A stretch of DNA of 64,000 nucleotides, from assembly GCA_051530055.1 (NCBI GenBank), contig CM121341.1, positions 2,842,151 to 2,906,150 on the forward strand, in the 5' to 3' direction. Below the pieces are notes generated by a model. That model made no database searches. It was not told where the DNA came from and saw nothing but the letters and a program-made list of their open reading frames with translations. This document shows, one piece after another, positions 7,919 to 37,960 of this stretch (positions are counted from its first letter, which is position 1; each line of letters begins with the position of its first letter). The position numbers and the translations under genes were made by a program. The DNA is from Neoechinorhynchus agilis (Eukaryota; Animalia; Acanthocephala).

Positions 7919-7939
7919 CGAAATAATGGATTAATATAA

Positions 7940-9040
7940 TTAATAATAGCACGGCTCATTTGTTGATTCACAAAGAAGAGGACCCATGTACCTTTGGGTC
8001 CTCATAAGCATTCTGGTTCATAATTGTTCAAAGAAAGCGTATCCGTTAGGATGGGAATATCCAGTCGACGGATGTCCGTTCGGGTGGTAATATCTGGTCG
8101 GAGGGCTGTCTATTCGAATGGGACTATAAAGTCGGGCGACGTTCGTTCGAGAATATCCGGTTGGTTTGGAAGGTTCGTTCTGGTGGGAATTGGTGTTTAT
8201 TGCTTCCGGGAGTGCTTGTAAGGTTGGTCTTTCCTCAGAATCATTTCACGTTATGATATCCGAGAGCGCAGGTTTTATTTGATCGCCTAAATTACTGCTT
8301 AAGATATAATAATAACACGTTTATTGTTGAAAATACAAAGAAAGAATAGGAGGACCCATGTACCTTTGGGTCCCCATAAGCATTCTGGTTCATAATTGTT
8401 CAAAGAAAGCGTATCTGTTAAGATGGGAATATCCAGTCGAGGGTTGTCCGTTCGGGTGGTAATATCTGGTCGGGGGGCTGTCTATTCGAATGGGACTATA
8501 AAGTCGGGCGACGTTCGTTCGAGTGAGAGTGTCCGTTCGTTTGAGAATATCCGGTCAGGTTGGAAGGTCGGTTTTGGTGGGAATTGGTGTTTATTGCTTC
8601 CGGGAGTGCTTGTAAGGTTGGTCTTTCCTCAGAATCATTTCACGTTATGATATCCGAGAGCGCAGGTTTTATTTGATCCCCAAATTACTGCTTAAGATAT
8701 AATAATAACACGTTTATTGTTGAAAATACAAAGAAAGAATAGGAGGACCCATGTACTTTTGGGTCCTCATAATCATTCAGGTTCATAATTGTTCAAAGAA
8801 AGCGTATCCGTTAAGATGGGAATATCCAGTCGACGGGTGTCCGTTCGGGTGGTAATATCTGGTCGGAGGGCTGTCTATTCGAATGGGACTATAAAGTCGG
8901 GCGACGTTCGTTCGGGTGAGAATTTGTCCGTTCGTTCGAGAATATCCGGTTGGGTTGGAAGGTTCGTTCGGGTGTGAATTGGTGTTTATTGCTCCCGGGA
9001 GTGCTTGTGAGGTTGGCCTACGTTATGATATCCGAGAAGA
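7940..9040 (-). repeat. ~2.7 copies of the 396-bp repeat (3' end of a CR1/L2-like LINE)
   Basis: Units in register with the repeated ORF starts 8024, 8396 and 8789; same left flank (aataatagcacggctcatttgttgatt) as the 22670 array. Confidence 0.9.
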
Positions 9041-9410
9041 TTGAGCAGCATAAAAATAGGAGCATAGATATTGGGACGTTCGAGGTCAAGGGAGGATGAA
9101 ACGAATTAGGATTAAGAGTGTTGTGTTCGTGTGAAAAGGAAGCGATATGTGGAAGAAATTGTGGTGGTGGCGATGATAGGCGTTTTTTTTATGAAAATAG
9201 CATGAAGGCATTCGGTGAGAGGAGGGAAGCCAGCTTTGCAAATTTTAGATGTTTTTTATGAAACATTTCAGGACGACGGACTTGAGATTTAAAAAGGTTG
9301 CAGCACCGGTTGCAGAAAATTATGGCCGGAAACCGTCATTTTTTAGAACAAGGATAACTTTAGCGGTTTTCAGGCATGATTGGTAGATGCCATATAAGAA
9401 GCTGCGACTT
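9040..9410 (-). mobile_element. CR1/L2-like LINE ORF2 C-terminal fragment
   Basis: 9140-9300 matches 26785-26940 (minus: QVRRPEMFHKKHLKFAKL); 9370-9410 matches 36735-36775. Confidence 0.65.
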
Positions 9411-11080: not shown

Positions 11081-11084
11081 AGGG

Positions 11085-12099: not shown

Positions 12100-12138
12100 C
12101 GAGACAAACACTAAAGATTTCTCCATCGAACTTTCAGA

Positions 12139-14699: not shown

Positions 14700-15157
14700 A
14701 GAATTTTCCTCCACCACAACGAAATATGAACAAATCAATCTTCAAAAATATCGCTGCGTAAAATTCCACAAAATGTGAGAAAAATATTCTTGTGCTCGAT
14801 TCTCATGTATAAATGTTGCCATTTAATCTCTCTCTTTAAAAAGCTTGTGAAATAATACTTGATTTTCCATCTGCATTTTGTTCAACGAAGTTTTGTTTTT
14901 AACTATATTTCATAAAGAAACCATAAGATCACGAAAGCTCCCGAAGTAAAGATATTTCTAAGGTACATTGTTTCTCTGCTTTGTTAATTAACAAACAAAT
15001 AAACGTGTTATTTTTATACCTTTAAACAAGCGTTGTGAATCTCAAATACTTTTCTACAATACGGTTTTTTTAAGACTAATTAATATCTCTGTATTCTTAT
15101 TGGTCAATCTCTAAAAAAAACGCAGATTCACCTACTTTCCAGTATTTTTACTCCTAT
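14700..15157 (+). repeat. 458-bp direct repeat, copy 1 (copy 2 at 17819-18276)
   Basis: agaattttcctccaccacaacg...cacctactttccagtatttt..ctcctat present twice, 3119 bp apart, with few differences. Confidence 0.95.
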
Positions 15158-15594
15158 TTGAATTTGAAATTTTAAATTAAACAAAAAAAGCCATTTCCCG
15201 AAGCAACGCATGCAATCTTATCATGAAGAATTTTCGGCCGATTATTTATTTCAATATTAATTTCAGTTTGAAGTTATGAACATACTTTTCGAATGCGTTG
15301 TTCTCCTTTAGGTCAATGCATTCATTGGCTTCTTTATTGTTGCAAAATGGTATTTGTAAATGTCCAGTAAATTGTAGCTATTTAAACCGAGGAAAATTGT
15401 CGTAAAAAAGACAATACGATTGCACATTTGTTAACTTTCACGCTTCTGAACGTTAAAGCAATCTTGATAATTAAAAATGCAATTTATGATGTATCAATAT
15501 AGAAAGTACAGTTTGATCTATGCTTTCGAATAAAAAAAGATGGGTTTAGAGAGTCGAATCTTTGTTCAATAAGTATCTATTCACTGATCTCGAA

Positions 15595-17818: not shown

Positions 17819-18276
17819 AGAATTTTCCTCCACCACAACGAAATATGAACAGTTCAATATTCAAAAATATCGCTGCGTAAAATTCCACAAAATGTGAGAA
17901 AAATATTCTTGTGCTCGATTCTCATGTATAAATGTTGCCATTTAATCTCTCTCTTTAAAAAGCTTGTGAAATAATACTTGATTTTCCATCTGCATTTTGT
18001 TCAACGAAGTTTTGTTTTTAACTATATTTCATAAAGAAACCATAAGATCACGAAAGCTCCCGAAGTAAAGATATTTCTAAGGTACATTGTTTCTCTGCTT
18101 TGTTAATTAACAAACAAATAAACGTGTTATTTTTATACCTTTAAACAAGCGTTGTGAATCTCAAATACTTTTCTACAATACGGTTTTTTTAAGACTAATT
18201 AATATCTCTGTATTCTTATTGGTCAATCTTTAAAAAAACGCAGATTCACCTACTTTCCAGTATTTTTTCCTCCTAT
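17819..18276 (+). repeat. 458-bp direct repeat, copy 2
   Basis: See 14700-15157. Confidence 0.95.
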
Positions 18277-18476
18277 GATCACTAAAAATTTTGTTGCACG
18301 TTGGTTTTCATGATACAAACAAAACTCAATGGCTCTACGCAAACCGTTAAAATCGCTTCAAAAAATGGACGGAATGAGCGCTGTTTCGTCGATGCAAAAT
18401 TGCGCTCCTTTCAGCCAACAGATCTACTTCAATTCGGACATTACCTACTATTCCCTCCCCGGGTGATTGTGAGGTT

Positions 18477-19507: not shown

Positions 19508-19936
19508 TTCGGCGCCTCTTTGTGTGCTTTGTCCAAGAAAGATGGTGGGACTCGTCCCATCGCCATTGGCTGCACTTTGCGTAGGTTAGCCGCGAAAGTT
19601 TTATGCAGGAGAATCTCCGATAAAATGGGAGAATTTTTGAGACCCTGTCAGTTAGGTTGCTGCACTCCTTGTGGAGTTGAAGCGGTCGTGCATGCTCTGC
19701 GAAAATTTATCCCCCAAAGAACAAAGCCAACAAAAATTCTGAAAGTAGATTTTAAAAATGCTTTCAATACTTTGAAAAGGGAAACAATGTTAAAAGCGAT
19801 TGAGGATGTCGTCCCAGAGGCTTACCCCTATTTCTGAAGAGCATATGCTAACCATACACCACTGCTGTACAACGACAAAATAATTTGGTCGCAGAGTGGT
19901 GTACAACAGGGAGACCTACTCGGCCCCATAGGCTTC
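19508..19936 (+). mobile_element. CRE-like RT fragment (N-terminal RT motifs up to GVQQGDLLGPIGF)
   Basis: GASLCALSKKDGGTRPIAIGCTLRRLAAK, QLG..TPCGVEAVVHA, KVDFKNAFN, stop at 19835-19837, then SQSGVQQGDLLGPIGF. Confidence 0.85.
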
Positions 19937-21230
19937 CTCCGGTATTGGCCATCCTCTACCTCGATGACCTGGAAAGACTGCACATCTATCCACATTTAGC
20001 GTCGAGTCAAGTTTACCTCCGCTATGTGGACGATGTGTTGCTGACCTTCAACGAGGATGATGAGGTCGATACCATTGAGTCACAATTAAATTCAATGGAC
20101 TCGAATATGAGGATTCAAGTTACAAGAGACCAACCTTCGGACTACCTGCCATTCCTCAATCTCCGCTTCAAATCCGACGATGTATCCAACTTCAATTGGT
20201 ATCGAAAGCCATGCAGGAAGTCGATTGTGATGCACCGAGATTCTCACCATCCTTGGGCGATGAAAGCGGCGATATACGCTGGTATGCATAAATCGGCAAC
20301 CACCTGCTCATCGTCGTGGGACGCGAAGCGTGGAGCGGTGGAAGCAGTAAACAAGATCTTCGCGGACAACGGATATTCGACAGAGGAGATCGAAGGATTC
20401 CAGCGAGAAGTGGAAAATAGAATTAGACGAGACGCTGGACCCATGAGGGAACGAAAGGACGATAGGCCGATCCTACGAATTCCGTACGTGAGTGAAATGT
20501 TCACGAAGAGAGTTAAAGTACTGCTCAGGCAAGCAGGGTTGAATGTGCGTATTGTGCACAGAGGGTGTAGAACGCTGCGGAGGATGCTGACGAGAACGAG
20601 GCATCATGAGGATCATCAGGAATGCCCTCGGTCGTGCCTAATGTGCAGATACGCAGCAGGTGCGAGGATGGACGAGGAGCGTCAGCAAGCCATTGATCGT
20701 GACTGGAAGATGTGCGATCAGAGCAGTGTGGTCTACGAGATCCGGTGTGAACGGTGTCGGATTGACCGTGGCCACTTGGTCACGTACGTGGGAAAAACAG
20801 AAAGGCCACTTCGCCAAAGAGTGGCCGAGCATGTACGAAACTCGTTGAACCCAAGTGCGCAATCGTATGTGACGACACCGTGGGCGAAACATTATTCGCG
20901 AGTCCACCCGGATGGAACAGTTCAGCTGTCCACGCGCATAATGTACAAAGCGCAGGATCCCGTCGAACTGTCGATAGCGGAAGCGCTGATCATATCCCGA
21001 GAGACCCGGGATCGTGAGGACTCTAGCGGGCATCGGTCGGTCGGTAGGACACTCATTAACCAGAAGGATGAGTTGTCTGCCGTCATGAATCTCATGTGAA
21101 CTTCCACTTCACTCGCATTGTAGATTACACCCTGAAGAAGCCGTTGGACGGCGAAAGCTAGGTGTTTCAATAAAATCTCTTTCAGTCGGATTGTCAATCA
21201 AACAATCATCAATAGATAAAACATTAATAT
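19936..21230 (+). mobile_element. 5'-truncated Penelope-like element (RT C-half, Cys-rich linker, GIY-YIG endonuclease, 3' pLTR)
   Basis: PVLAILYLDD, YLRYVDD, LPFLNL, WYRKP..SHHP, NGY, IPYVSE, CxxxCxxC linker, VVYEIRCERC...YVGKTERPLRQRVAEH, AEALII, LINQK; hammerhead and AATAAA just after the stop. Confidence 0.92.
21127..21165 (+). ncRNA. Minimal type-I hammerhead ribozyme in PLE pLTR
   Basis: ACACC-CTGAAGA-A-GCCGT(tgg)ACGGC-GAAA-GC-TA-GGTGT: 5-bp stem I, 5-bp stem II, palindromic AGCT stem III, CUA cleavage triplet. Confidence 0.88.
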
Positions 21231-21239
21231 TGTTAAGAA

Positions 21240-22400
21240 ATTTTTTATTCCCGAGACGAAAGGACGTATTTTTAACGCTTCCCACATTAAAGTCATATCC
21301 ATACAGAACCCAATTGTCTCTTGCTTAGAAAGCGCGGTGAACGGGAAGCTGTATGACTTTTTAGTTTCTAGAAATCTTATACCTGACTTTTTTCATGGTT
21401 TTATTTGGGGTAAAGGTGTTACTTCGCTTTTATTCTCTCTTAATTCCATGAATGAAGCTATTAATTTACAAAAACTTCTCATTCAGTTGGATATTAATAA
21501 GGCTTTTGACGCCTCGGATCCCTCTTTCCCTTATGAGGCATTAGTTAGTCTAAAAGTTCTTCTAAATATTATCTACAAAACCAACTATCTTATGGAATCT
21601 AAGTCATTTTACTATGAGGTGGACCCTTCTCACAGGATCTCCACTCTCGCCCACCTTATTTTTAATTGCCCTTATATATATTTTCAAAAATTTAAAGAAA
21701 TCATCTCCCATATTTACGCTAGTTTATACGGATGATATATTTCTATTTTGTAAAGCTAGAACATCTTCAATCCTAACTAATAATATAGCTAATTTTATGA
21801 ATTCTTTGTCTTCGGAACTTAGGAAAGCCAATCTGGTTGTAAATAGTAACAAAACTTTCTTTATTCCACTTACTAAAACCTTGGTCTCGAGGAAGCTCCT
21901 AATTAATGAATTAGCATCTAATTTAAATTTCCTTAACATCAACTTTAGATCACATTCCAGGATTTTAAGTGTAGACTTCCCTTGTAAGAATCATAGTATT
22001 TTTATCAACTCTTCCGTTAAAAGTCTATTGGCAAAAACAGTTATCTTCATCAAAAGAGCAAAAAGGCTCTCCATCCCTTCTCTATCTTTAAAGTTTTAAA
22101 AATCTTTTTAGGGGGTCCATTTGCTTGTTCGCACCAGGCCGGCACCCTGAAAATACGCTTTCCTTTTTTCGTATCTTGCTAAATAAGCTTAGTAGTATTC
22201 TCTTTAGAAATAATAGACACGGCACTCATTTTTTCCTTTTTAACAAGACTTTTCTTGCCTGAAATCTGGTTTTTTCTAATCTTAATTCTATCTGTAAATA
22301 TTTTAAATATAACTCTTCAATTCACATAATCTTTTACAATAACTCCACTAATCTATTAAACAGGAAAGAGGAAAGTGATTTCTTTACGCTCATCTCTCAT
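21240..22400 (+). mobile_element. Degenerate AT-rich LINE reverse transcriptase
   Basis: HGF..GKG, QLDINKAFD, GSPLSPTLFLIAL, YTDDIFL, L.VNSNKT spread over frameshifted ORFs 21337-22099. Confidence 0.7.
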
Positions 22401-22669: not shown

Positions 22670-25600
22670 ATTAATTAATAATAGCACGGCTCATTTGTTG
22701 ATTTACAAAGAAGAGGACCCATGTACCTTTGGGTCCCCATAAGCATTCTGGTTCATAATTGTTCAAAGAAAGCGTATCCGTTAGGATGGGAATATCCAGT
22801 CGACGGATGTCCGTTCGGAAGGTAATATCTGGTCGGAGGGCTGTCTATTCGAATGGGACTATAAAGTCGGGCGACGTTCGTTCGAGTGAGAATTTGTCCG
22901 TTCGTTCGAGTGAGAATTTGTCCGTTCGTTTGAGAATATCCGGTTGGGTTGGAAGGTTCGCTCGGGTGGGAATTGGTGTTTATTGCTTCCGGGAGTGCTT
23001 ATAAGGTTGGTCTTTCCTCAGAATCATTCCACGTTATGATATCCGAGAGCGAAGGATTTATTTGATCGCCTAAATTACTGCTTGAGATATAATAATAACA
23101 CGTTTATTGTTGAAAATATCCTCATAAGCATTCAAGTCCATAATTGTTCAAAGAAAGCGTATCCGTTAGGATAGGAATATCCAGTCGAGGGATGTCCGTT
23201 CGGGTTGTAATATCTGGTCGGAGGGCTGTCTATTCGGGCCGGGCTATAAAGTCGGGCGACGTTCGTTCGGGTGAGAATTTGTCCGTTCGTTCGAGAATAT
23301 CCGGTTGGGTTGGAAGGCTCGTTCGGGTGGGAATTGGTGTTTATTGCTTCCGGGAGTGCTTGTAAGGTTGGTCTTTCCTCAGAATCATTCCACGTTATGA
23401 TATCCGAGAGCGCGGGTTTTATTTGATCCCTAAATTACTGCTTAAGATATAATAATAACACGTTTATTGTTGAAAATACAAAGATAGAGTAGGAGGACCC
23501 ATGTACCTTTGGGTCCTCATAAGCATTCTGGTTCATAATTGTTCAAAGAAAGCGTATCCGTTAGGATAGGAATATCCAGTCGATGGATGACCTTTCGGGT
23601 GGTAACATCTGTTCGGAGGGCTGTCTATTCGAGCGGGGCTATAAAGTCGGGCAACGTTCGTTCTGGTGAGAATTTGTCCGTTCGTTCGAGAATATCCGGT
23701 TGGGTTGGAAGGTTCGTTCTGGTGGGAATTGGTGTTTATTGCTTCCGGGAGTGCTTGTAAGGTTGGTCTTTCCTCAGAATCATTCCACGTTATGATATCC
23801 GAGAGCGCAGGTTTTATTTGATCGCCTAAATTACTGCTTAAGATATAATAATAACACGTTTATTGTTGAAAATACAAAGAAAGAATAGGAGGACCCATGT
23901 ACCTTTGGGTCCTCATAAGCATTCAAGTTCATAATTGTTCAAAGAAAGCGTATCCGTTAGGATGGGAATATCCAGTCGACGGATGTCCGTTCGGGTGGTA
24001 ATATCTGGTCGGAGGGCTGTCTATTCGAATGGGACTATAAAGTCGGGCGACGTTCGTTCGTGTGAGAATTTGTCCGTTCGTTTGAGAATATCCGGTTGGG
24101 TTGGAAGGTTCGTTCTGGTGGGAATTGGTGTTTATTGTTCGTAGGAGCGCTTGTAAGGTTGGTCTTTCCTCAGAATCATTTCACGTTATGATATCCGAGA
24201 GCGCAGGTTTTATTTGATCGCCTAAATTACTGCTTAAGATATAATAATAACACGTTTATTGTTGAAAATACAAAGAAAGAATAGGAGGACCCATGTACCT
24301 TTGGGTCCTCATAAGCATTCAAGTTCATAATTGTTCAAAGAAAGCGTATCCGTTAGGATGGGAATATCCAGTCGACGGATGTCCGTTCGGGTGGTAATAT
24401 CTGGTCGGAGGGCTGTCTATTCGAATGGGACTATAAAGTCGGGCGACGTTCGTTCGGGTGAGAATTTGTCCGTTCGTTTGAGAATATCCGGTTGGGTTGG
24501 AAGGTTCGTTCGGGTGGGAATTGGTGTTTATTGCTTCCGGGAGTGCTTGTAAGGTTGGTCTTTCCTCAGAATCATTCCACGTTATGATATCCGAGAGCGC
24601 AGGTTTTATTTGATCGCCTAAATTACTGCTTAAGATATAATAATAACACGTTTATTGTTGAAAATACAAAGAAAGAATAGGAGGACCCATGTACCTTTGG
24701 GTCCTCATAAGCATTCAAGTTCATAATTGTTCAAAGAAAGCGTATCCGTTAGGATGGGAATATCCAGTCGACGGGTGTCCGTTCGGGTGGTAATATCTGG
24801 TCGGAGGGCTGTCTATTCGAATGGGACTATAAAGTCGGGCGACGTTCGTTCGGGTGAGAATTTGTCCGTTCGTTTGAGAATATCCGGTTGGGTTGGAAGG
24901 TTCGTTCGGGTGGGAATTGGTGTTTATTGTTCGAGGAGCGCTTGTAAGGTTGGTCTTTCCTCAGAATGATTTCACGTCATGATATCCGAGAGCGCAGGTT
25001 TTATTTGATCGCCTAAATTACTGCTTAAGATATAATAATAACACGTTTATTGTTGAAAATACAAAGAAAGAATAGGAGGACCCATGTACCTTTGGGTCCT
25101 CATAAGCATTCAAGTTCATAATTGTTCAAAGAAAGCGTATCCGTTAGGATGGGAATATCCAGTCGACGGGTGTCCGTTCGGGTGGTAATATCTGGTCGGA
25201 GGGCTGTCTATTCGAATGGGACTATAAAGTCGGGCGACGTTCGTTCGGGTGAGAATTTGTCCGTTCGTTTGAGAATATCCGGTTGGGTTGGAAGGTTCGT
25301 TCGGGTGGGAATTGGTGTTTATTGCTTCCGGGAGCGCTTGTAAGGTTGGTCTTTCCTCAGAATCATTTCACGTTATGATATCCGAGAGCGCAGGTTTTAT
25401 TTGATCGCCTAAATTACTGCTTAAGATATAATAATAACACGTTTATTGTTGAAAATACAAAGAAAGAATAGGAGGACCCATGTACCTTTGGGTCCTCATA
25501 AGCATTCAGGTTCATAATTGTTCAAAGAAAGCGTATCCGTTAGGATGGGAATATCCAGTCGACGGGTGTCCGTTCGGGTGGTAATATCTGGTCGGAGGGC

Positions 25601-26780
25601 TGTCTATTCGAATGGGACTATAAAGTCGGGCGACGTTCGTTCGGGTGAGAATTTGTCCGTTCGTTTGAGAATATCCGGTTGGGTTGGAAGGTTCGTTCGG
25701 GTGGGAATTGGTGTTTATTGCTTCCGGGAGCGCTTGTAAGGTTGGTCTTTCCTCAGAATCATTTCACGTCATGATATCCGAGAGCGCAGGTTTTATTTGA
25801 TCGCCTAAATTACTGCTTAAGATATAATAATAACACGTTTATTGTTGAAAATACAAAGAAAGAATAGGAGGACCCATGTACCTTTGGGTCCTCATAAGCA
25901 TTCAAGTTCATAATTGTTCAAAGAAAGCGTATCCGTTAGGATGGGAATATCCAGTCGACGGATGTCCGTTCGGGTGGTAATATCTGGTCGGAGGGCTGTC
26001 TATTCGAATGGGACTATAAAGTCGGGCGACGTTCGTTCGGGTGAGAATTTGTCCGTTCGTTTGAGAATATCCGGTTGGGTTGGAAGGTTCGTTCGGGTGG
26101 GAATTGGTGTTTATTGTTCGTAGGAGCGCTCGTAAGGTTGGTCTTTCCTCAGAATCATTTCACGTCATGATATCCGAGAGCGCAGGTTTTATTTGATCGC
26201 CTAAATTACTGCTTAAGATATAATAATAACACGTTTATTGTTGAAAATACAAAGAAAGAATAGGAGGACCCATGTACCTTTGGGTCCTCATAAGCATTCA
26301 GGTTCATAATTGTTCAAAGAAAGCGTATCCGTTAGGATGGGAATATCCAGTCGACGGATGTCCGTTCGGGTGGTAATATCTGGTCGGAGGGCTGTCTATT
26401 CGAATGGGACTATAAAGTCGGGCGACGTTCGTTCGGGTGAGAATTTGTCCGTTCGTTTGAGAATATCCGGTTGGGTTGGAAGGTTCGTTCGGGTGGGAAT
26501 TGGTGTTTATTGTTCGAGGAGCGCTTGTAAGGTTGGTCTTTCCTCAGAATCATTTCACGTTATGATATCCGAGAGCGCAGGTTTTATTTGATCGCCTAAA
26601 TTACTGCTTAAGATATAATAATAACACGTTTATTGTTGAAAATATCCTCATAAGCATTCAAGTTCATAATTGTTCAAAGAAAGCGTATCCGTTAGGATGG
26701 GAATATCCAGTCGAGGGATGTCCGTTCGGGTGGTAATATCTGGTCGGAGGGCTGTCTATTCGGGCGACGTTTGTTCGGGT
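22670..26780 (-). repeat. Tandem array of ~10.3 x 396-bp units (amplified 3' end of a CR1/L2-like LINE)
   Basis: Repeated ORF starts at 22759, 23144, 23539, 23935, 24331, 24727, 25122, 25518, 25914 and 26310 (mostly 395-396 bp spacing); most units carry the hairpin GAGGACCCA-tgtacctt-TGGGTCCTC. Confidence 0.97.
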
Positions 26781-27100
26781 AGGCGATATGTGGAAGAAAT
26801 TGTGGTTGTAGGATTGAGAGGCGTTTCGATTGTTTTATGAAAATTTGATTAAGGTATTCGGTGAGAGGAGGAAAGTCAGCTTTGGAAATTTTAGATGTTT
26901 TTTATGAAACATTTCAGGACGACGGATTTGAGATTTGGAAATGTTGCAAAATACGGGATGACCGTAGACGAGGGAAGGTAAAATAAAGCAGAAGTAACAT
27001 TTGTAGAGTTCGTGTGACCGTAAAATCAAAGTCCAACTGCTGCTTGTAGTTTCGCCAACTCTTTTTTTCCTTCTAAAAGGGGCGGAAAATCGCTGCTTTA
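26780..27100 (-). mobile_element. CR1/L2-like LINE ORF2 C-terminal fragment leading into the 396-bp array
   Basis: LY....ILPSLVYGHPVFCNISKSQIRRPEMFHKKHLK matches the LYxxxIxPxLxYxxPVW...L.RLE motif of CR1/L2 ORF2. Confidence 0.7.
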
Positions 27101-27441
27101 GCATTATCCTTCTTGGCCACTTCCTTAGGATCGTCCCCCGTCAACAACTGCTCCAATAGTTGTTGCTGTTGATTTAGAATGGTTCGCAATAACTCCTTCT
27201 CGTCCCCAGTTTGGTTTTTTTACTGGCGCACATGATATCGAGCATCGTCAAAATTAATACGATAGATTTCCCCACAGGTCGCAATACCGCGAATTCCGCA
27301 GAAATGTTGATTTCATCTTCGAAAGTTGCCGAGTCTTAAGAAAAAACCCAAATCCTTCTGGATAGCCTTAAAAAATCAGGAAGAAGCGGAACTTGAGTAC
27401 GATTTCGGCTAAATTTCTAATAAATCGTCTGCTTGTAAGAC

Positions 27442-29528
27442 ATGGAAGTAAATCATTGTCATTTAGTTGTGGGCCCGCCTGGATCCGGTAAGACGACTTA
27501 CTGCTTTGCCATGCTGGTAAGCTTATCTCAAGTTTAAAAATTGATGAAATCTTTTTTAAAATCAGGAAATTTTGAATACACTTGGCCGTAGAGCCATAAT
27601 AGTAAATTTGGATCCAGGAACAGAATCTACGACCTTAGAGTACCATATTGACATCCGTGAGTTTCGTCGAGTTGAACAAGTGATGAAGGAAAAAGATATT
27701 GGTCCTAATTGTGCGATGTTGCATTGTATGAAAGATGTTGCTGACCAATCTGATTGGTTAAGGAAATCCTTGGAGAAGTTCAACGGATATTATGCGATCT
27801 TTGATTGCCCAGGGCAGGTTCACATTTCGGATCTTCATACTCAAAATTTAACGAATATTTAGGCAGAACTGTACGTTTCATGCGAATCAATGTGCAAAAT
27901 TATTACACATTTAAGCAATTGGAATTATCGAATTTGTTGCTTAAATCTGATCGATTCCGTCTACATCAACGAACCGATGCAATTCATTTCTGCTACATTA
28001 ATGAGTCTCTCAACAATGTTGCATTTAAGGGTTTTATTTTGAATTTATCTTCTAGGTGTTCAAAATAAAACAAATGGAGTTGCCACATTTAAATGTTCTG
28101 ACTAAATTAGATATGTTAAGTATCATTAAAACGGAAACGTCACAAATGTACAGCGCTGAATTTTATTTGGAAACACTTGATCAAAAAAGAATGATTGATG
28201 AAAACAAGCCCATTGGCAGGATCCTAAAGCCGATTTGTGACGTTCTGGACGCCTATTCGCTCGTTACTTATACGGTAGTTGATGTTAAGGTATTTCAATT
28301 TTCATACTTTTGGCTATTTTGGAAGAAGAAAAAATTATTTTGTTCAATTGCGTACTATTATGTTTTTAATTATTTTTATTTCTAAATCAAATCATAGCTT
28401 TTATGTCAAGTATCGTAATTTTTTTAAGATTTTCTGTTAATTGATCATTGATGCCAGTTGCCCTTTTGTCTGTAATGAAATTTTTTTAATGTCTATTCTG
28501 AGAAAAAAATGTACTAAAAATATCCATTAGGTAGTTCAAAGCAGCCCAAATTGTATTAAGTATTGCAAAAATATAGAATATAAAAATGCTTTTCAAATTT
28601 GAATTTTTTAAAAAATATGATATGTGTTTTTTAACAATCTAAATTATGAACTTTGAGAGTACTTCATTATAATCAAGCTGTCCTAGTAAAAATGTTACAA
28701 ATAACAAATAAAATTTTTTAAACCTATTTGTACAAAACACTAAACTTTCACTCGATTTAGTTTTTAGTTCTAGTAAAATGTCTTTTATCAAATCCGCATT
28801 AGCCATACGTTATGATTGTTCGGCAGCTTCCTTGATGGCCACGGCATTTCCGCGTTGGATCGCCGCGTTGATTCGCTGCAACAGGAAGCTGCTGGAGCGC
28901 ATGTCGCATGCGTACTTCATTATTTTATAAACATTTTTAATGACGCTCCTAATATTATATAATATTTGATCAAATGTTAATATTCAACAAATTATAAAGC
29001 TAGCTTTACATATACTTCTTATATAGAAATTTGTTGCAAATAAAAATTTCGAATTTATTTTTCTACGACTTAGTAATTGCTCATCTACCTAAAATTTAGA
29101 GTTAGAACCACTTTTAAAGACGAAAACTCATCGGTGACAGTTTTATAAAAATTAGTATGGCAGGTAAATTATTCTAGTCGCAAACAAAGAATAATGTAGG
29201 GCAAATGAAAAATATCGTATACCTTTTGAGTTAATAAACTGTTCTTCTTACGATTCAAAAGTTCGCTAACTTTTATAAATTAAGTTCGATTTCGGGTTAA
29301 TAATTATTTTGTTTTAAAGTCCTTCAGATACCAATCTTTTGTGATATTTCTGTTTAGAACACGGAATCACTTCTCAATTTGTTGGGCCAAATCGATAACT
29401 GTACCGGATATGTCGAAGATGAAGCACGTAGCGTAAACTTCATTGTCAACTCGACTTCGGTGAAAAGAAGGCAAAAAGATTTCGAGATTATGCAATTATA
29501 CATGAACGGTAGTCCAAATGAAGAATAA
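27442..29528 (+). CDS. GPN2: GPN-loop GTPase 2, multi-exon
   Basis: VVGPPGSGKTTYC, VNLDP, IGPN, FDCPGQV, LPHLNVLTKLD; last exon tttag|AAC at 29358 (NTESLLNLLGQIDNCTGY...EE*). Confidence 0.85.
28805..28920 (-). mobile_element. CRE-like 3' end fragment in the last GPN2 intron; diverged inverted relative of the 314-bp array unit
   Basis: Minus strand reads MKYACDMRSSSFLLQRINAAIQRGNAVAIKEAAEQS*. Confidence 0.75.
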
Positions 29529-29974: not shown

Positions 29975-31287
29975 AACGTAACTAGCATTATGTTGAGTTT
30001 GTGAAGTTATTAAAAAACTTGCGAATCACAGCTTATTTCCTTTTCACGACTGGGAAAGATGCTGAAATATGGCATCGGCGATATGCACTCCAGCAGCTTC
30101 CGGATGCAGCGAATCAGCGCGGCGATCCAACGCGGCAATGCAACGGCCATCGAGGAAGCTGCCAAACAATCATGACCACAAAGCGATGCTTCAGGAGGCT
30201 GAGGCCTTAAAAATTCGCAATGAAGATTTTACAAAAATCGAGTGTTTTACCATTCGCTTCTGGGAATTATTTTTTTTTGTTGAAATTCAGCGTAATTAGC
30301 ATTATGTTGAGTTTGTGAAGTTATTAAAAAACTTGCGAATCACAACTTATTTCCTTTTCACGACTGGGAAAGATGCTGAAATATGGCATCGGCGATATGC
30401 ACTCCAGCAGCTTCCGGATGCAGCGAATCAGCGCGGCGATCCAACGCGGCAATGCAACGGCCATCGAGGAAGCTGCCAAACAATCATGACCACAAAGCGA
30501 TGCTTCAGGAGGCTGAGGCCTTAAAAATTCGCAATGAAGATTTCTATAAAACTCGAGTGTGTTACAATTCGCCGTTAGAATTATTTTTTTTGTTGAAATT
30601 CAACGTAATTAGCATTATGTTGAGTTTGTGAAGTTATTAAAAAACTTGCGAATCACAGCTTATTTTCTATTCACGACTGGGAAAGATGCTGAAATATGGC
30701 ATCGGCGATATGCACTCCAGCAGCGTCCGGATGCAGCGAATCAGCGCGGCGATCCAACGCGGCAATGTTACGGCCATCGAGGAAGCTGCCAAACAATCAT
30801 GACGACAATGCAATGCTCGAGAAGATGAAGCCTTAAAAATTCGCAATGAAGATTTCTACAAAAATCGAGTGTTTTACCATTCGCTTCTGGGAATTATTTA
30901 TTTTGTTAAAATTCAACGTAATTAGCATTATGTTGAGTTTGTGAAGTTATTAAAAAACTTGCGAATCACAGCTTATTTCCTTTTCACGACTGGGAAAGAT
31001 GCTGAAATATGGCATCGGCGATATGCTCTCCAGCAGCTTCCGGATGCAGCGAATCAGCGCGGCGATCCAACGCGGCAATGCTACGGCCATCGAGGAAGGT
31101 GCCAAACAATCATGACGACAATGCAATGCTCGAGAAGATGAAGCCTTAAAAATTCGCAATGAAGATTTCTACAAAAATCGAGTGTTTTACCATTCGCTTC
31201 TGGGAATTATTTATTTTGTTGAAATTCAACGTAATTAGCATTATGTTGAGTTTGTGGAGCTATTAAAAAACTTGCGAATCACAGCTA
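29975..31287 (+). repeat. Tandem array of ~4.2 x 313-314-bp units built on a CRE-like 3' end
   Basis: Unit starts 30001, 30315, 30628, 30941 and 31254; an unlisted frame in each unit reads KYGIGDMHSSSFRMQRISAAIQRGNATAIEEAAKQS*. Confidence 0.93.
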
Positions 31288-31540: not shown

Positions 31541-32356
31541 ATGTCCACGTTATGGCTTGGCTGCCACAATTCCCGGTTAAAATGTCTTCGTGAGCCGGAA
31601 AAAGAACTTGAGATTATCTCGGACAACCTTGAGAGGACCGAAGCGGTCAGCGTTATTGTTCCCGGTCCGTATTATGGCCGTAGGTCCGGGAAAGTCGGTA
31701 AGATTTCCGGCTCAAAATCAAAGGACCTATTCGAAATCGGCGAATCCGTTCGTGGGTTGGCTCATAGAAGTGAAGGTCTCTTCGCCTGTGGAATTAACGA
31801 TCTCTTCTTTAAAGGAGAACCTCTAAACGGATTCAATGACGGCTCGAACATTAGGAAAATGAAGCAAATATCCAATAATCAGTTAGCGATCGCCAGTGAT
31901 CGATTACGCGTTTGGGACATGGAATCTTCAACAATGAGCTATTCGTCCCGTTCAACTCAATCCGAAATTGTCGATCTTACAAATTCTGAGAAACTGTTAA
32001 CCGTTGCTCTCAGTTCAGGAGGACTGTTAGTTTATTCGATTGAAAGCGAGAAACCCGTCATTCGATTGCCCGAAGTGTCTTTTGCTCGATCCCTGTTTTC
32101 CGTTGGCCAATTCGATCGAATATTGATTGGCACGGGGACTGGACGTGTCTTTGAGCTCGACCTTCGATTCACGAAACAACCAAAACGATCTTTTAAAGGA
32201 GCCGCTGGGAGTATCCGGGCTTTGAATATTTGGAAGGATCGATATGTCGTCAGTGGCGGCTTGGAAGGAATCCTAAGGATCCATTCTCTTGATGATGGCA
32301 CTTTAAACAGAGAATTTAATTGCTTTTCCCGGATTGAATGCATTTGTTGTTCTTAG
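31541..32356 (+). CDS. WDR74: WD40 ribosome-biogenesis protein, WDR74/NSA1-like, intronless
   Basis: LWLGCHNSRLK start, IGTGTGRVFELDLR, FKGAAGSIRAL, VVSGGLEGILRIH, C-terminal SRIECI. Confidence 0.65.
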   Translation: MSTLWLGCHNSRLKCLREPEKELEIISDNLERTEAVSVIVPGPYYGRRSGKVGKISGSKSKDLFEIGESVRGLAHRSEGLFACGINDLFFKGEPLNGFNDGSNIRKMKQISNNQLAIASDRLRVWDMESSTMSYSSRSTQSEIVDLTNSEKLLTVALSSGGLLVYSIESEKPVIRLPEVSFARSLFSVGQFDRILIGTGTGRVFELDLRFTKQPKRSFKGAAGSIRALNIWKDRYVVSGGLEGILRIHSLDDGTLNREFNCFSRIECICCS

Positions 32357-32950
32357 ATGCTTGAGGCCTTCGAATCTGTATCTACATGACAAGTAAATCT
32401 TCGTCTTAGATTTTGTATATTTTTTCAAGAAAATTACCATCGAGAATTCTCTCCTTTTTTCATCTTCGTTCAATGACAAGCCAATGAAAGTTTTCGATGC
32501 ATCCCAAATCTTCTTCTCTCGATATTTCACGGTAAATAGTCTACTGAATGACTTCAAAAAACGGTTATTTATTTAAAAAGTATGCCTTACAAATTTCAAA
32601 ATATTATATTTTATTTAATGCAAAGTTCTTACAATCGAGAATTCTCTCCTTTTTCATCTTTATTCAATGACAAGCCAAAGAAGAGGAAAAATGTACCTCT
32701 GAGTTGTGAGATCTTTAACAGAGAGAAATTCTTATTGATAGATTTGCAATCAAAGAATCAGACAATAAATTTTTTTAAAGAATTGAAATAATTTTTCGAT
32801 GGATTTCCTTATTTTATCACTTTTAATTGAATTTTGTACCGAAATCGGAAAGACGGAATTCAGCGTAATAATAACACATTTTACGGTTCAGAGTAGAGGA
32901 GGTTTAACTGAACGTGAGAAAGTTGATGGTTATTGGGTTTTGTTATTTCC

Positions 32951-33194
32951 TCAATTTTAATCCTCCGGACATGCAATTAGTGCATTGATTAATTTTTAAT
33001 AAAGATAATTCGCCAACATTTTTGTCAATTAGACTAATCGTTCATCTCCCATATACACAACTGTAGCACCCGACCTTTTCTTCATGTCAATTCTTCGTTG
33101 GCGATTAGAAACTGAGAATCTATCTGCTCGGCAAAGACTCCTACGTCGATTGGAATTAATCCGGATGTATTTAATGGGTGTAACCTTATTGCTT
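32951..33194 (+). repeat. 244-bp direct repeat, copy 1 (copy 2 at 34728-34971)
   Basis: tcaattttaatcctcc...gtaaccttattgctt twice, 1777 bp apart. Confidence 0.93.
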
Positions 33195-34971: not shown

Positions 34972-36444
34972 CGTTTTGATTTTGCGTGATTGATACCATC
35001 ATGTTGATGATCAGACAATCTCGATTTGCCTAAATTTAATTTAAACAACAAAAAAAATGTTTATAACAATACTCTTGAATGTATTTTTGTTTGCATCTGA
35101 CACTTTATCGGCAATTAATTTTACATGATATTTGGCAGTTCGCGATTGGTGTGATCCCATCTACGGATTAAATCGAGAATTTTTTGTATGGGTGTTTGTG
35201 GCCGAAATCGTTTTTTAAATGCACGACTGAACGACGTGTATTTTTGCGACGTTAATTTGACTTATCCTTTTTAACCTTTTCTTAAACTGTTCATCTTTAT
35301 ACAAAAAGGTCATTTAAGAGGAAACCTCATAAACAAGACATAACGAGGAAGCTTTTATAGAACTCCTTTAAACGGTTACAACCACACTCGAAGAGTGTCA
35401 CTCGTCCAAAAAATGTGTACCCACTTAATGTCAAAAATCACACTTTTTCCCCAAGAAATGTGCTGGACGCTGTAAACACTCGAGAATCATGCAACCAAAC
35501 AATATTTCTGTAGCCAGTTATTGAGACAGATTTTTGCTTTTATAAAATATTTTTGCAGTACTTCCAAAAATTTTTATATATTGAAAAATTACTTGTAAGA
35601 AATGACTTGGAATTCTCATCTATATGCTATAAGTTCTTCAGTAAATGGAAGATTTTGTGCCTTAATAATTTTTAACTATTGAGAAAAACCAACGATTTCT
35701 TTGTTGATGTGTTTGTGCAACTCGCCTTTTCATTAATTTAAAAATAGTAAATTCTCTTTGTTTTCTTGCCAGACAACATTTATTTTTTTACAGACTTAAA
35801 ATTTCAACCGATTAATACCGGTAAGTATTTTGGATTCTGTTCTTTTCGAAAGGAGATTTTACCCTTGAGAAATACCAACGATTTCTTCATCGATGCGTTT
35901 GTATAATTCGTCTTTTAATTAATTTAAAACTAGTAAATTCTCTATGTTTTCTTATGACCAAATATTTATTTTGAAGAATGTTAATCTCTTTGGTTTCTCG
36001 CAAGAAAATATTTATTTTGAAGAATGTTAAAGCTTCAACAGGTTTATACCGATGATCAATCAATCGCTTGACGGCGTCCTGATCGAGGGCCGCAAGGTCT
36101 TGGCGAACCATAGGCGAGATTGATGAGTCCAGAATGAAGGCAACTTTAGGCTCACTGCCTGTATCGATGTTCGTCTTGGGGAATAACTTGGAAAATACGT
36201 TCACAAGTGTTGGGATCACCAATGTAGTCGAAAAACCGATTTTATGTTATCTTTTTAGACTCTCTCATATCGAGTCCATTTCACATTTGATTGAAACTAA
36301 AGACCCAGAATTCTGAGGTGGTTATTCGTCTGATCAAAAATAAGAGAAATTATTATTGATGAAAATTTGCAATTAAACAATCAGACAGTAACGATTTTTC
36401 GACAAAATTGAAATCATTGTTGATATATTTATCGATTAGATTCT

Positions 36445-37960
36445 TCACATTTTATTGTTCAAAGTAGAGGAGGTTTAAATGAATGTAGCTGTTTATTTTG
36501 GAATGGATGGCGGGTCCGGTCAAGTGGGAAAGTTAGTGATTATTGGTGTAAGAGTTTGTAATTTTGGGTCTTTCCTCCAGTTCATATTGACACTAATAAA
36601 GACTCGAATCGTCATTTAAAATTTCAAACATACTTTTGTTGACTTTGCTAAGATTGTTATAAACATGGTGAAGCGGTACTTTGTCTAATATCTTTTAAAG
36701 TAATTCATCAGGCAATGTATCCAGAGTTCGACTTTCAGGCATGATTGGTAGATGCCATATAAAAAGCTGCGATTTATAATGTGGGTAAGAGTGTTTATGA
36801 GTTCGGTGATGATGTAGCGAAGAGCCCAGTTTGGGATTTCGGTTTGAGAGGACGAATTTCTAGGTAATTTCTTGAGATGTTGGAAGACGTCTTATGACGA
36901 AACTAAGTGGAGCATCGGCGAGTTGACAGCAGTTTTAGTTGTAGGAGTGACAGTTTTTATGGAGTCTAAGATTTGGGTAATGGTTGTAATATGATTCAAA
37001 CCAGAGTTTCTGATTAATGGAATCTAGAACCTGTTTTAATTCAGTGGAGGACAAATTAGGGAAGGGATCCGGGTGGTGTAGACCGAGAGAGTCCTTGGCG
37101 GCCCGCCACGATGTTGAGTTGCTACCTGAATGCGGGCGATAAATATTTTTGTTAGTTAGTGTTATTTGTAAACGGGGAAAGTCTGGAGAGTTATTGCGAT
37201 GGGTTTTGGAAGCTTGCCTTAGGGTCGCGGTTGGAGATTTTAATGAAATTCTTGGGAATTGCCGAAGCTGGGGAATTTTCTATGATTGAGTTAGGGAGGA
37301 AATGGCCAAGGAAGGGTCATTTGTGTTGTTAGAGTGGGATGTGAGGATGTTAGAGTTGAATAATTTTATAAAATTGTGGATGTAATGACCACGTTTATCC
37401 CAGAAGGGTAAACGGGGAGATTTCATACGCAGAGGTGGAATGGAACGAGTGATAAGGGCAGAGAAATGGTGGAGTTCGCGGGGAGAGGGAGTTTAGAGGC
37501 GGATGAGTGGTCGTAGATATTTGTGAACACTTTGTCGAGGTGAGCGTCAAAACGAGTTGGGAAGTCAATAAGTTGACGCAACTCGGAGAAGGGTAGAAGA
37601 GGAAATAGATTATTGAAGTCCCCTGCAATTAAGAAATTGTGCGAATTTGTAGAGTTTATGAGATCCGTCGTGTAATCAAGTTGGCGCAAAGAGGACTCAG
37701 GATGAGAGGTCGGAGGGCGATAGACGCCAGCATGGTGAATTCTCTAAGGCCGTTTCTCAGAGGAGCTATGAAATGGACTGCGATGAATTCTAGGATTTGA
37801 GATCTATTATTCGACCCTTCGGAGCAAATCATCGCGATCCAACCAAATAAACCGCTCACGTCCAAATCTTTGTTAGAAGTTCTCTCCAAAGAAACGATTC
37901 CAAACTCACTTTTATTGTGAACTTTTTCTTGTACATCATCTCGATTACTTACTTTATAAA
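36445..37960 (-). mobile_element. Internally deleted CR1/L2-like LINE (APE endonuclease, RT remnants, single-copy 3' end)
   Basis: GVYRPP, FLIAGDFN, FPTRFDAHLDKVFTN; 36500-36600 is a diverged single homologue of the 396-bp unit. Confidence 0.8.

What the first reader, a model, noticed from the sequence alone, without database searches (positions are those of the whole stretch)
22670..27100. 396-bp satellite is the serially amplified 3' end of a CR1/L2-like LINE, with variable copy number at three loci
Seen: on the minus strand a CR1/L2-type ORF2 C-terminus (26780-27100; 9040-9300) runs straight into the array at both loci, about 10.3 units here and about 2.7 at 7940-9040. Both arrays end in the same terminus (...gagccgtgctattattaat). 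A third, diverged LINE copy has one un-amplified homologue of the unit at 36500-36600 (ttgtaa..ttgggtctttcctc.ag; gtgggaa..tt.gtg.ttattg). Known: CR1/L2 LINEs use a 3' stem-loop for cis recognition by their RT. Inference: this family generates or carries multi-copy 3' tails, linking LINE transposition to satellite birth.
Basis: partly seen in the sequence, partly recalled or inferred. Interest (0 to 1): 0.72.

Follow-up and report, generated by a model that had tools for sequence, protein, structure and literature searches.

The report
Retroposon tail amplified into tandem arrays
In this thorny-headed worm genome, the 3' end of a dispersed, non-coding retroposon-like repeat has been duplicated head-to-tail into 396-bp arrays of different length at two sites; this is a clear but ordinary case of a mobile element seeding satellite-like DNA, and the claimed adjoining LINE gene is not there.

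Summary
The window comes from Neoechinorhynchus agilis (Acanthocephala). Both arrays are real: 22672-26766 holds 10.3 units of 396 bp and 7937-9019 holds 2.75 units. They share the same terminus and a non-array "head". The third-locus homologue at about 36443-36590 is also real, and I found more single-unit relatives, at 32866-32960 and in three other loci of the same genome.

The CR1/L2 ORF2 C-terminus said to run into the arrays is not supported. The head has stops in all three frames. Indels among four copies are not multiples of three. It has no Pfam domain and no LINE homologue among 1.84 billion proteins.

The element is a dispersed retroposon-like family whose sense strand is the window's minus strand. 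Its 3' end is constant: a conserved inverted repeat, AATAAA, then a variable TTA-like tail. Its 5' ends vary. No coding partner was found.

Each repeated unit is the whole 3' module plus a 45-nt linker. All 12 unit junctions at both loci are identical. This points to one ancestral tail-to-internal dimer that was carried to new sites and then expanded or contracted at the DNA level, not to arrays made afresh by reverse transcriptase at each insertion. It is a new example of a known kind of event.

The parts
22672..26766 (-). Array 1: 10.3 units of 396 bp. Boundaries on the + strand: u1 22672 (terminal variant, carrying a 24-bp internal duplication at 22875-22934), u2 23089, u3 23449, u4 23845, u5 24241, u6 24637, u7 25032, u8 25428, u9 25824, u10 26220, u11 26615-26766 (partial).
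   Evidence: TRF, blastn of the unit, unit alignment and identity matrix. Units u4-u10 are 97.5-99.5% identical. Units u2 and u11 share a deletion of about 35 bp that removes the inverted repeat.
26767..27007 (-). Non-coding 'head' on the 5' side (retroposon sense) of array 1. It is fused to a partial unit by a deletion at 26766/26783.
   Evidence: 26783-27007 is 86% identical to L002 1010-786. 26783-26948 matches 9142-9302. Stops in all frames, non-3n indels, no Pfam domain, no LINE homologue.
7937..9019 (-). Array 2: 2.75 units (u1 7937 terminal variant, u2 8306, u3 8699-9019). The innermost unit runs on collinearly into the unamplified upstream sequence.
   Evidence: The terminal unit is 96.7% identical to the terminal unit of array 1.
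9020..9141 (-). 'Inner' segment between head and array. It is present at locus 2, in L002 and in L003, and is deleted at locus 1.
   Evidence: 9022-9302 is 77% identical to L002 1118-844. 9093-9246 is 74% identical to L003 5448-5290.
9142..9316 (-). Head of the locus-2 copy, 5'-truncated. Homology ends at 9302. A weak candidate target-site duplication, AAATAATGG at 7921 and AAATTATGG at 9317, would place the end at 9316.
22715..22736 (-). Conserved 7-bp-stem inverted repeat GGACCCA-N8-TGGGTCC. It lies about 45 nt (terminal copies) to about 50 nt (internal units) from the 3' end and is present in 12 units, 11 with an exact match and one with one mismatch.
   Evidence: Pattern search: 12 hits against 0 expected. 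RNAalifold predicts the stem in 7 family members but finds no compensatory changes.
36443..36590 (-).
   Evidence: Smith-Waterman score 26 against shuffles of 11 +/- 1.6. nhmmer tail profile E = 5.6e-10. 25 of 26 bases match the compact L003 copy.
32866..32960 (-). A fourth, short and diverged single-unit copy, with a tail followed by the 'gtgagaaagttgatggttattgg...tttcctc' patch.
   Evidence: nhmmer E = 2.4e-7. Smith-Waterman score 25 against shuffles of 10.8 +/- 1.5. Sequence read.
14960..15015 (+). Tail fragment of the family in the opposite orientation. It is duplicated at 18079-18134 inside a 490-bp direct repeat. A 23-bp tail remnant lies at 14624-14646.
   Evidence: nhmmer E = 4.9e-5 for each copy. 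The 15-mer AATAAACGTGTTATT occurs exactly 3 times outside the arrays, against 0.02 expected.

Best explanation
The arrays belong to a dispersed, non-coding, retroposon-like repeat family of Neoechinorhynchus agilis, here called X. Its sense strand is the window's minus strand. A basic X copy reads 5'-head / inner / 3' module-3'. The 3' module ends in a conserved inverted repeat, an AATAAA signal, 13 nt, and a variable TTA/TAAT-like simple tail. Copies keep this 3' end and differ at the 5' end, as products of target-primed reverse transcription do.

In one lineage a tail-to-internal tandem dimer formed once. A 5'-truncated copy of the last roughly 350 nt came to lie 45 nt downstream of a complete tail, either by a second insertion next to the first or by a local duplication. 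The resulting 396-bp period is the 45-nt linker plus the 3' module.

An element already carrying at least two units then spread to new sites. After that, unit number changed by ordinary DNA-level unequal exchange or replication slippage, giving 10.3 units at one site and 2.75 at the other.

Shown: the anatomy, the family, the identical junctions, the orthologous terminal unit, and the recent local expansion. Inferred: mobilisation through RNA by an unidentified LINE-type reverse transcriptase, how the first dimer arose, and recognition of the inverted repeat by that enzyme.
For: Family and orientation. A profile of the last roughly 90 nt finds, in 148 kb of this genome, the 14 array units plus 9 further sites. 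These include single-unit copies at window 36443-36522 and 32866-32946, L003 5528-5605, L001 12610-12695, L003 7109-7188 and L003 18909-18980.

The 3' ends coincide and carry short variable AT-rich tails...GCTATTATTAATTAAT...GTTATTATTA...GTTATTATAA. The 5' limits of homology differ: 27007 or beyond (locus 1), 786 (L002), 9302 (locus 2), 5290 (L003) and about 32960. AATAAA lies 13 nt before every unit end.

There are no terminal inverted repeats. Outer flanks are unrelated on both sides.

The compact L003 copy (5290-5607) has tail, patch, inner and head in the same order without amplification. At locus 2 the innermost unit continues collinearly into inner plus head.

Single origin of the dimer. 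All 12 junctions at both loci read ACTGCTTAAGAT|ATAATAATAACACG, with one substitution in one of them.

At least two units were carried. The terminal units of the two loci are 96.7% identical to each other but only 91-96% identical to other units, and they share a tail variant that lacks AATAAA.

Local expansion. Locus-1 units u4-u10 are 97.5-99.5% identical. Units u2 and u11 share a private deletion.

Precedent. Tail-to-internal tandems of non-LTR elements arise regularly by consecutive insertion and can expand into arrays (PMC5932611). Satellites derived from LINE 3' UTRs are known (PMC9659126).
Against: No autonomous partner or reverse-transcriptase ORF contiguous with X was found, so mobilisation through RNA is inferred from anatomy only.

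No convincing target-site duplication was found. Locus 1 has none; locus 2 has one 9-mer with a mismatch.

Internal units carry AATAAA, so a multi-unit transcript would have to read through several polyadenylation signals.

The heads of loci 1 and 2 are only 85-88% identical while their terminal units are 96.7% identical. That calls for recombination or template switching between subfamilies, conversion between arrays, or selection on the 3' module, and none of these was tested.

The inverted repeat shows no covariation, and the fold of the 3' end is not unusually stable (z = -1.6).

Only about 148 kb of the genome could be sampled.
Confidence: 0.55

Rival explanations
1. One reading: a CR1/L2-like LINE whose ORF2 C-terminus abuts the array, and whose reverse transcriptase makes multi-copy 3' tails during each insertion by template jumping or slippage on the 3' module. 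Unit number would then be set at integration.
For: The repeated unit includes the complete 3' terminus, so each unit ends like a finished cDNA template. A conserved inverted repeat sits near the end. 5' ends vary. Copy number differs between loci.
Against: There is no ORF2. Stops occur in all frames, indels are not multiples of three, and there is no Pfam or HMMER homology. All 12 junctions, including the 45-nt linker, are identical at both loci; independent template jumps would be expected to give heterogeneous junctions. Blocks of 97.5-99.5% identical neighbouring units and a shared private deletion in u2 and u11 point to DNA-level duplication. No feature specific to CR1 or L2 was found.
Confidence: 0.1
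2. Each array was built in place by repeated insertion of a discrete 396-bp short retroposon into the TTA-like tail of the copy already there, that is, by insertion-site preference as in the double-insertion model.
For: Every unit starts right after a complete tail, and the tails are simple TTA-like repeats that could serve as a target. Tail-to-internal tandems of non-LTR elements form this way in Drosophila (PMC5932611).
Against: No solitary 396-bp unit was seen in 148 kb. All units have the same length and the same junction, whereas serial insertions should give variable truncation points and tail lengths. The same diverged terminal unit sits at the outer end of both arrays.
Confidence: 0.1
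3. The repeat is an ordinary satellite or minisatellite copied between sites by segmental duplication, ectopic recombination or reintegration of extrachromosomal circles, with no transposition involved. The 'element ends' would then be chance breakpoints.
For: Unit dynamics are typical of satellites. The arrays are more alike between loci than the adjoining head is, as expected if arrays exchange sequence.
Against: At both loci the similarity stops at the same base on the tail side, with unrelated DNA beyond. At least nine further dispersed copies share this 3' end without any array and have different 5' limits.
Confidence: 0.08
4. The arrays are the internal tandem repeats of a non-autonomous DNA element (Helitron/Helentron, MITE or foldback type), as in oyster Helentron-borne arrays or Drosophila DINE-1.
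For: Dispersed short arrays flanked by conserved non-repeat arms are the signature of such elements (PMC7492417). A hairpin lies near one end.
Against: There are no terminal inverted repeats at either locus; scores of 7 and 8 match shuffles of 7.1 +/- 1.2. Read from the sequence, the ends are not 5'-TC...CTRR-3'. Only one end is constant and the other is truncated at different points. AATAAA plus a simple-repeat tail marks the constant end.
Confidence: 0.07
5. The repeat is a non-autonomous element mobilised by Penelope-like elements (an animal 'retrozyme' or pLTR-type partial tandem). A very young Penelope-like element is present in this window.
For: Penelope-like elements typically occur as partial tandems that repeat the 3' part (established knowledge). 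A copy at 19885-21224 is 97.5-99.7% identical to one on another chromosome (L003 9795-8830), so this class of element was active recently.
Against: No hammerhead ribozyme or any other Rfam family was found in the unit even at E <= 10. The Penelope-like element's 3' end (...CAATAGATAAAACAT) is unrelated to the X tail.
Confidence: 0.05

Closest known systems
Tail-to-internal tandem dimers of non-LTR retrotransposons that expand into arrays (double-insertion model; McGurk & Barbash 2018, PMC5932611)
   Same: The complete 3' tail of one copy is followed by a 5'-truncated copy of the same element, and this junction is later amplified to many units. Copy number varies.
   Different: Here a 45-nt linker separates tail and next copy. 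The dimer seems to have stayed mobile, because the same junction occurs at two unlinked insertions. The element is a short non-coding family with no known partner.
Satellites derived from LINE 3' ends: chicken HinfI/SCR1 from the CR1 3' UTR plus part of ORF2, the common cetacean satellite from the L1 3' end, and Drosophila 18HT from the HeT-A/TART 3' UTR (review PMC9659126)
   Same: The 3' non-coding end of a retroelement becomes the monomer of a tandem array.
   Different: Those are large, mostly heterochromatic satellites traced back to a known autonomous LINE. Here the arrays are short (1-4 kb) and euchromatic, still sit inside recognisable element copies, and have no identified LINE parent.
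SVA and LAVA composite retroposons of hominoids (own knowledge)
   Same: A non-autonomous retroposon carries an internal tandem array whose unit number differs between insertions. It is moved in trans by a LINE enzyme and is 5'-truncated on insertion.
   Different: The SVA VNTR has 35-50-bp units in the middle of the element and ends in a SINE-R part plus poly(A). Here the 396-bp unit is the 3'-terminal module itself and the tail is TTA-like.
Arrays carried by non-autonomous Helentrons and MITEs in bivalves and by DINE-1 in Drosophila (PMC7492417)
   Same: Short satellite-like arrays are dispersed through euchromatin on the back of a mobile element, with a variable number of repeats per copy.
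   Different: Those carriers are DNA elements with two fixed ends. X has one fixed end, a variable 5' end, a polyadenylation signal and a simple-repeat tail.
CR1/L2 'stringent' LINEs and their SINE partners (own knowledge)
   Same: A conserved inverted repeat a few tens of nt from the 3' end is followed by a short simple-repeat tail. Copies are 5'-truncated and target-site duplications are weak or absent.
   Different: No EN/RT ORF2 is contiguous with any copy seen. There is no covariation in the stem. The tail motif, TTA-like, would equally fit an RTE-type partner. The only clearly LINE-derived reverse transcriptase next to an array, the RTE-like 9411-11081, is on the other strand and ends in (ATACA)n.

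Membership tests
CR1/L2-type LINE (3' end of an autonomous element) | ORF2 with AP-endonuclease and reverse-transcriptase domains lying upstream of, and contiguous with, the 3' UTR | tested here: not met
   Three-frame Pfam scan of 26700-27450(-) and 9020-9420(-) found no RT or EN domain. Stops in all frames. Indels not multiples of three among 4 copies. The 89-aa ORF has no LINE homologue in 1.84e9 proteins. Upstream sequences of locus 1 and L002 are unrelated.
CR1/L2-type LINE (3' end of an autonomous element) | Conserved 3' stem-loop recognised by the element's own RT | tested here: inconclusive
   A 7-bp-stem inverted repeat is exact in 11 of 12 units and near-exact in 3 diverged copies. 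RNAalifold finds the stem but with 0 compensatory pairs. Fold z-score is -1.6. Two subfamilies lack the stem.
CR1/L2-type LINE (3' end of an autonomous element) | Clade-typical 3' microsatellite (for example octamer repeats in CR1, TGAA-type in L2) | tested here: not met
   Tails are short, variable TTA/TAAT-like runs. No octamer or TGAA repeat is present. This tail type is not specific to any clade.
Non-LTR retroposon in general (TPRT product) | Constant 3' end with variable 5' truncation | tested here: met
   The 3' ends coincide in all copies. 5' limits are 27007 or beyond, L002 786, 9302, L003 5290 and about 32960.
Non-LTR retroposon in general (TPRT product) | Target-site duplication flanking the whole insertion | tested here: inconclusive
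   None at locus 1. At locus 2 there is one 9-mer with a mismatch, at 7921 and 9317. Some LINE clades make none.
SINE | Pol III promoter head derived from tRNA, 5S or 7SL RNA | tested here: not met
   ARAGORN found no tRNA in the window. Rfam found nothing relevant in 26740-27140 at E <= 10. The true 5' end of the family is not yet defined, so a head further upstream cannot be excluded.
Satellite DNA | Head-to-tail tandem arrays of a monomer with concerted, array-wise evolution | tested here: met
Satellite DNA | High genomic copy number or long arrays | not testable with these tools
   Only about 148 kb of this genome could be read. Within that, two arrays of 4.1 and 1.1 kb were found.
Penelope-like-element-associated retrozyme | Hammerhead ribozyme in each repeat unit | tested here: not met
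   Rfam at the gathering threshold on the whole window, and at E <= 10 on 23400-24400, found no hammerhead.
Helitron/Helentron or MITE carrier of tandem repeats | Two fixed termini (TIRs, or 5'-TC...CTRR-3' with a subterminal hairpin) | tested here: not met
   The TIR test gave chance-level scores. Read from the sequence, the ends are not TC/CTRR. One end is variable.

The most novel reading that the evidence does not exclude
The array-bearing 3' module is itself the currently successful mobile unit. A retroposon carries a ready-made satellite 'seed' of at least two units to new euchromatic sites, where it expands, and the seed recombines onto different heads by template switching. That would explain why arrays at different loci are 93-97% identical while their heads are only 85-88% identical. 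It would amount to satellite dispersal driven by retroposition in a syndermatan genome, caught at an early stage.
Probability: 0.2. Interest if true: 0.55.

Novelty: new member of a known kind. Interest (0 to 1): 0.3.

Why it matters
Most examples of tandem arrays arising from mobile elements are reconstructed long after the event. Here the intermediate stages sit together in one genome: un-amplified single-unit copies, a 2.75-unit copy, a 10.3-unit copy, one shared dimer junction and a still-recognisable element frame. With the whole assembly and long reads, the order of events (dimer formation, mobilisation, local expansion) could be counted directly. Repeats of Acanthocephala are essentially undescribed: the genome paper only masks them and offers no transposable-element or satellite description (PMC12690905). 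A curated consensus of this family would therefore also improve annotation. Beyond that, the finding is ordinary and changes no concept.

Tried and rejected
1. Using the + strand unit ORF (73 aa) as a protein handle to find other arrays gave no hit at all. Transposable-element ORFs of this genome are not in the protein collection.

2. The 89-aa minus-strand ORF across the head, searched exhaustively, gave only a junk tandem-repeat ORF.

3. Repeat 'Y' (36733-37800, and 9368-9410 plus 11078-11465) lies 5' of an X copy, in the same orientation, at two loci and has an endonuclease-like patch. I tested it as the missing LINE body. A profile of it found no protein homologue. It has no significant similarity to the head or to the sequence upstream of X at locus 1 or in L002. 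It also ends at the same base at both loci, which is not how a 3'-intact LINE behaves. I rejected it as a demonstrable parent. The adjacency remains unexplained.

4. Hammerhead or retrozyme idea: no Rfam hit.

5. tRNA, 5S or 7SL head: none.

6. TIR or Helitron ends: none.

7. I first took the hairpins at 14470-14626 for a related tail. They belong to a TTAA-flanked, piggyBac-like MITE that also occurs at L003 1690-2040. Only the 23 bases that follow are X-like.

8. I first argued that both window copies end at the same 5' point. L002 showed that locus 1 continues to 27007, so that argument was dropped.

9. An exact scan of JGI metagenome contigs for the inverted repeat gave 0 hits.

10. An 11-kb sample of Pomphorhynchus laevis and a fourth N. 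agilis locus contain no X tail.

11. The TSD search gave nothing convincing.


Full report
SOURCE AND SETTING

The window is eukaryotic: about 37% G+C, introns of about 50 bp and many interspersed repeats. A small heat-shock-protein ORF at 12139-12978 matches proteins named 'hypothetical protein ACOME3_... [Neoechinorhynchus agilis]'. The forkhead ORF at 15595-16587 places window 5595-26590 on chromosome CM121341.1 of assembly GCA_051530055.1, at 2847745-2868740. No gene model overlaps either array. The genome paper masks repeats but offers no transposable-element or satellite description (PMC12690905).

Only about 148 kb of this genome could be read: the window plus four 21-kb loci reached through sHSP paralogues, L001-L004.

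THE OBSERVATION

Both arrays are real. Array 1 occupies 22672-26766, which is 10.3 units of 396 bp. Array 2 occupies 7937-9019, which is 2.75 units. Both start on the + strand with TAATTAATAATAGCACGGCTC, and the DNA to the left of that point is unrelated at the two sites.

To the right of the arrays the two window loci share only 26783-26948 and 9142-9302, at 85.5% by blastn or 88% by global alignment. I call this shared stretch the 'head'. The evidence is against that:
- All three minus-strand frames contain stop codons.
- No frame has a Pfam hit to RT, endonuclease or any LINE domain at E <= 1.
- Four copies of the head differ by indels of 1, 5, 1 and 26 bp.
- The one sizeable ORF, 27104-26838 (89 aa), was searched with phmmer against 1.84 billion representative proteins. 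It found one protein, and that protein is itself a translated tandem repeat.
- The frame that is open into the array is about 70 codons long and then stops.

The head is therefore non-coding.

A DISPERSED FAMILY WITH A FIXED 3' END

Other loci of the same genome contain relatives:
- L002 1118-786 has inner plus head. It shows that the locus-1 copy extends to 27007.
- L003 5290-5607 is a compact copy of about 320 bp with tail, a short 'patch' (ttgctaggttgggtttttcctc), inner and head in that order, with no amplification.
- L001 12130-12700 is a diverged single-unit copy.

A profile built from the last roughly 90 nt of nine copies finds every array unit. It also finds window 36443-36522 (E = 5.6e-10), 32866-32946 (E = 2.4e-7), 14960-15015 and its duplicate 18079-18134, plus four sites in L001 and L003.

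The unit-like patch at 36504-36577 scores 26 by Smith-Waterman, against 11.2 +/- 1.6 for shuffles. Only two other non-array places in the window reach that score. The rest of that locus cannot be aligned to the head or to other parts of the unit.

Three features set the sense strand as the window's minus strand:
- The 3' ends coincide and carry short, variable AT-rich tails, while the 5' limits differ: 27007 or beyond, L002 786, 9302, L003 5290 and about 32960.
- AATAAA lies 13 nt before the end of every unit.
- There are no terminal inverted repeats.

This is the anatomy of target-primed retroposition. The target-site duplications that would clinch it were not found.

An inverted repeat, GGACCCA-N8-TGGGTCC, sits about 45 nt from the end in the terminal copies and about 50 nt from the unit end in internal units. 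It is identical in a copy that is otherwise diverged (L003 18926-18959). That makes it a candidate recognition stem. However, it shows no compensatory changes, and two subfamilies lack it.

HOW THE ARRAYS ARE BUILT

Read in sense, each repeated unit is a 45-nt linker (ATCTTAAGCAGTAATTTAGGCGATCAAATAAAACCTGCGC) followed by the last roughly 350 nt of the element through to its tail. At locus 2 the innermost unit lacks the linker and continues collinearly into inner plus head, as in the un-amplified copies. The structure is therefore head-inner-B-(L-B)n, a tail-to-internal tandem.

Four observations bear on how it arose:
- All 12 unit junctions at both loci are the same 38-mer, with one substitution in one of them. 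The dimer junction therefore arose once and was then copied. Independent template jumps or serial insertions should give varied junctions.
- The outermost unit of one array is 96.7% identical to the outermost unit of the other, but only 91-96% identical to other units. The two also share a tail variant without AATAAA. A structure of at least two units thus predates the two insertions.
- Within locus 1, units u4-u10 are 97.5-99.5% identical. Units u2 and u11 share a private deletion of about 35 bp. These are signs of recent local unequal exchange.
- The unit itself contains about six degenerate 33-bp sub-repeats, so this 3' region has duplicated at more than one scale.

WHAT IS NOT EXPLAINED

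(a) No autonomous partner was found. The reverse-transcriptase fragments near the arrays belong to other elements. An RTE-like LINE on the + strand at 9411-11081 ends in (ATACA)n and is nested in another repeat. A degenerate LINE lies at 21337-22099(+). A Penelope-like element lies at 19885-21224(+).

(b) Repeat 'Y' lies 5' of an X copy, in the same orientation, at loci 2 and 3. It has only a sub-threshold endonuclease match, no protein homologue and no similarity to the head.

(c) The heads are much more diverged (85-88%) than the arrays (93-97%) between loci 1 and 2. Possible reasons are recombination or template switching between subfamilies, conversion between arrays, or selection on the 3' module in master copies.

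(d) The linker has a 31-nt look-alike at L001 9364-9394 and L002 4832-4862, which are paralogous sites. It ends exactly at the unit boundary. This may hint at where the first dimer formed.

(e) Moving a multi-unit copy through RNA requires read-through of internal AATAAA signals.

COMPARISON WITH WHAT IS KNOWN

Tail-to-internal tandems of non-LTR elements form regularly by consecutive insertion and can expand into arrays (PMC5932611). LINE 3' UTRs have given rise to satellites in chicken (CR1 to HinfI/SCR1), cetaceans (L1) and Drosophila (HeT-A/TART to 18HT) (PMC9659126). Non-autonomous elements carry variable arrays in bivalves (PMC7492417) and, from my own knowledge, in hominoid SVA elements. 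This finding is a further member of that kind, in a phylum whose repeats are undescribed. Membership in CR1/L2 fails the defining test, a contiguous ORF2. Membership in SINEs, retrozymes and Helitron-type carriers also fails the features I could test.

VERDICT

The arrays, the shared terminus and the un-amplified homologue are real; the ORF2 is not. The repeat is an amplified mobile-element 3' end with variable copy number, but it is not shown to be a LINE, it is not CR1/L2 by any tested feature, and the arrays look like DNA-level expansions of one ancestral dimer rather than tails made at each transposition. Interest is modest.

Noticed in passing
window 19885-21224 (+); L003 8830-9795 (-): A Penelope-like element (RT with YVDD plus a C-terminal GIY-YIG nuclease, in a 404-aa ORF) is 97.5-99.7% identical to a copy on another chromosome. 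This suggests very recent activity. Both copies end at ...CAATAGATAAAACAT.
   Followed up: partly
window 9411-11081 (+): A 5'-truncated RTE-like LINE (RT ORFs, MAYADDIVL at 10303) ends in (ATACA)5.6. It is inserted into repeat 'Y', because 9368-9410 and 11078 onward are contiguous at 36733-36900.
   Followed up: partly
window 36733-37800 (-); 9368-9410 plus 11078-11465 (-); L002 8998-9094: Repeat 'Y' has a weak endonuclease-like patch (Pfam E = 0.074) and ends at the same base at two loci, each time just 5' of an X-family copy in the same orientation. It has no protein homologues. Downstream of it, 36600-36720(-) gives an F-box Pfam hit (E = 7.6e-5) in a frame with stops.
   Followed up: partly
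window 14405-14626 (+); L003 1690-2040 (-): A TTAA-flanked MITE with CCCTTTGCAC... ends (piggyBac-like) contains three GTCCCACC(G)GGTGGGAC hairpins. In the window its right end is replaced by a 23-bp X-family tail remnant.
   Followed up: partly
window 29975-31286: A 313-bp tandem repeat of 4.2 copies. Each unit holds an inverted, 86-88% identical copy of the exon-like stretch 28808-28907.
   Followed up: partly
window 43300-45053: A 175-bp tandem repeat of 10 copies, 96-98% identical, of unknown origin. A diverged partial copy lies at 43161-43298.
   Followed up: no
window 51887-55217 (+): A coding tandem repeat of 222 bp (74 aa, ...DIYSAEINDEEQKSSTQFDDINTTTDLYEQTSSEKLNKFAYQYDG...) lies in a 440-aa ORF with a signal-peptide-like start, followed by frame-broken further copies. 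It may be a lineage-specific secreted repeat protein.
   Followed up: no
window 31791-32500 versus 63290-64000: An inverted duplication, 99.3% identical, includes most of a WD40-like gene (ORFs 31541-32356 and 63435-63932) and runs off the end of the window.
   Followed up: no
window 14683-15173 and 17804-18292: A 490-bp direct repeat, 96% identical, flanks the forkhead gene (15595-16587). Each copy contains an X-family tail fragment.
   Followed up: no
window 55581-57324 (-): A G+C-rich stretch (54%) contains LTR-retrotransposon pol ORFs (RT with YIDDVLVAS, and an integrase-like part), which stand out from the 37% G+C background.
   Followed up: no
window 11561-13475; L001 9420-11340; L002 9437-11366; L003 10035-11682: There are at least four paralogous blocks, 94-99% identical, carrying a two-domain small heat-shock-protein gene. 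Three lie within about 270 kb on one chromosome.
   Followed up: partly
L003 18780-18910 (+): Just upstream of an X-type tail lies a run of 18-24-bp repeats (GTCATCCAC.CCGGATCC) that reads as (SSTPDP)n in one frame. It resembles the 33-bp sub-repeats inside the 396-bp unit, and similar repeats occur at L003 2520-2580.
   Followed up: no
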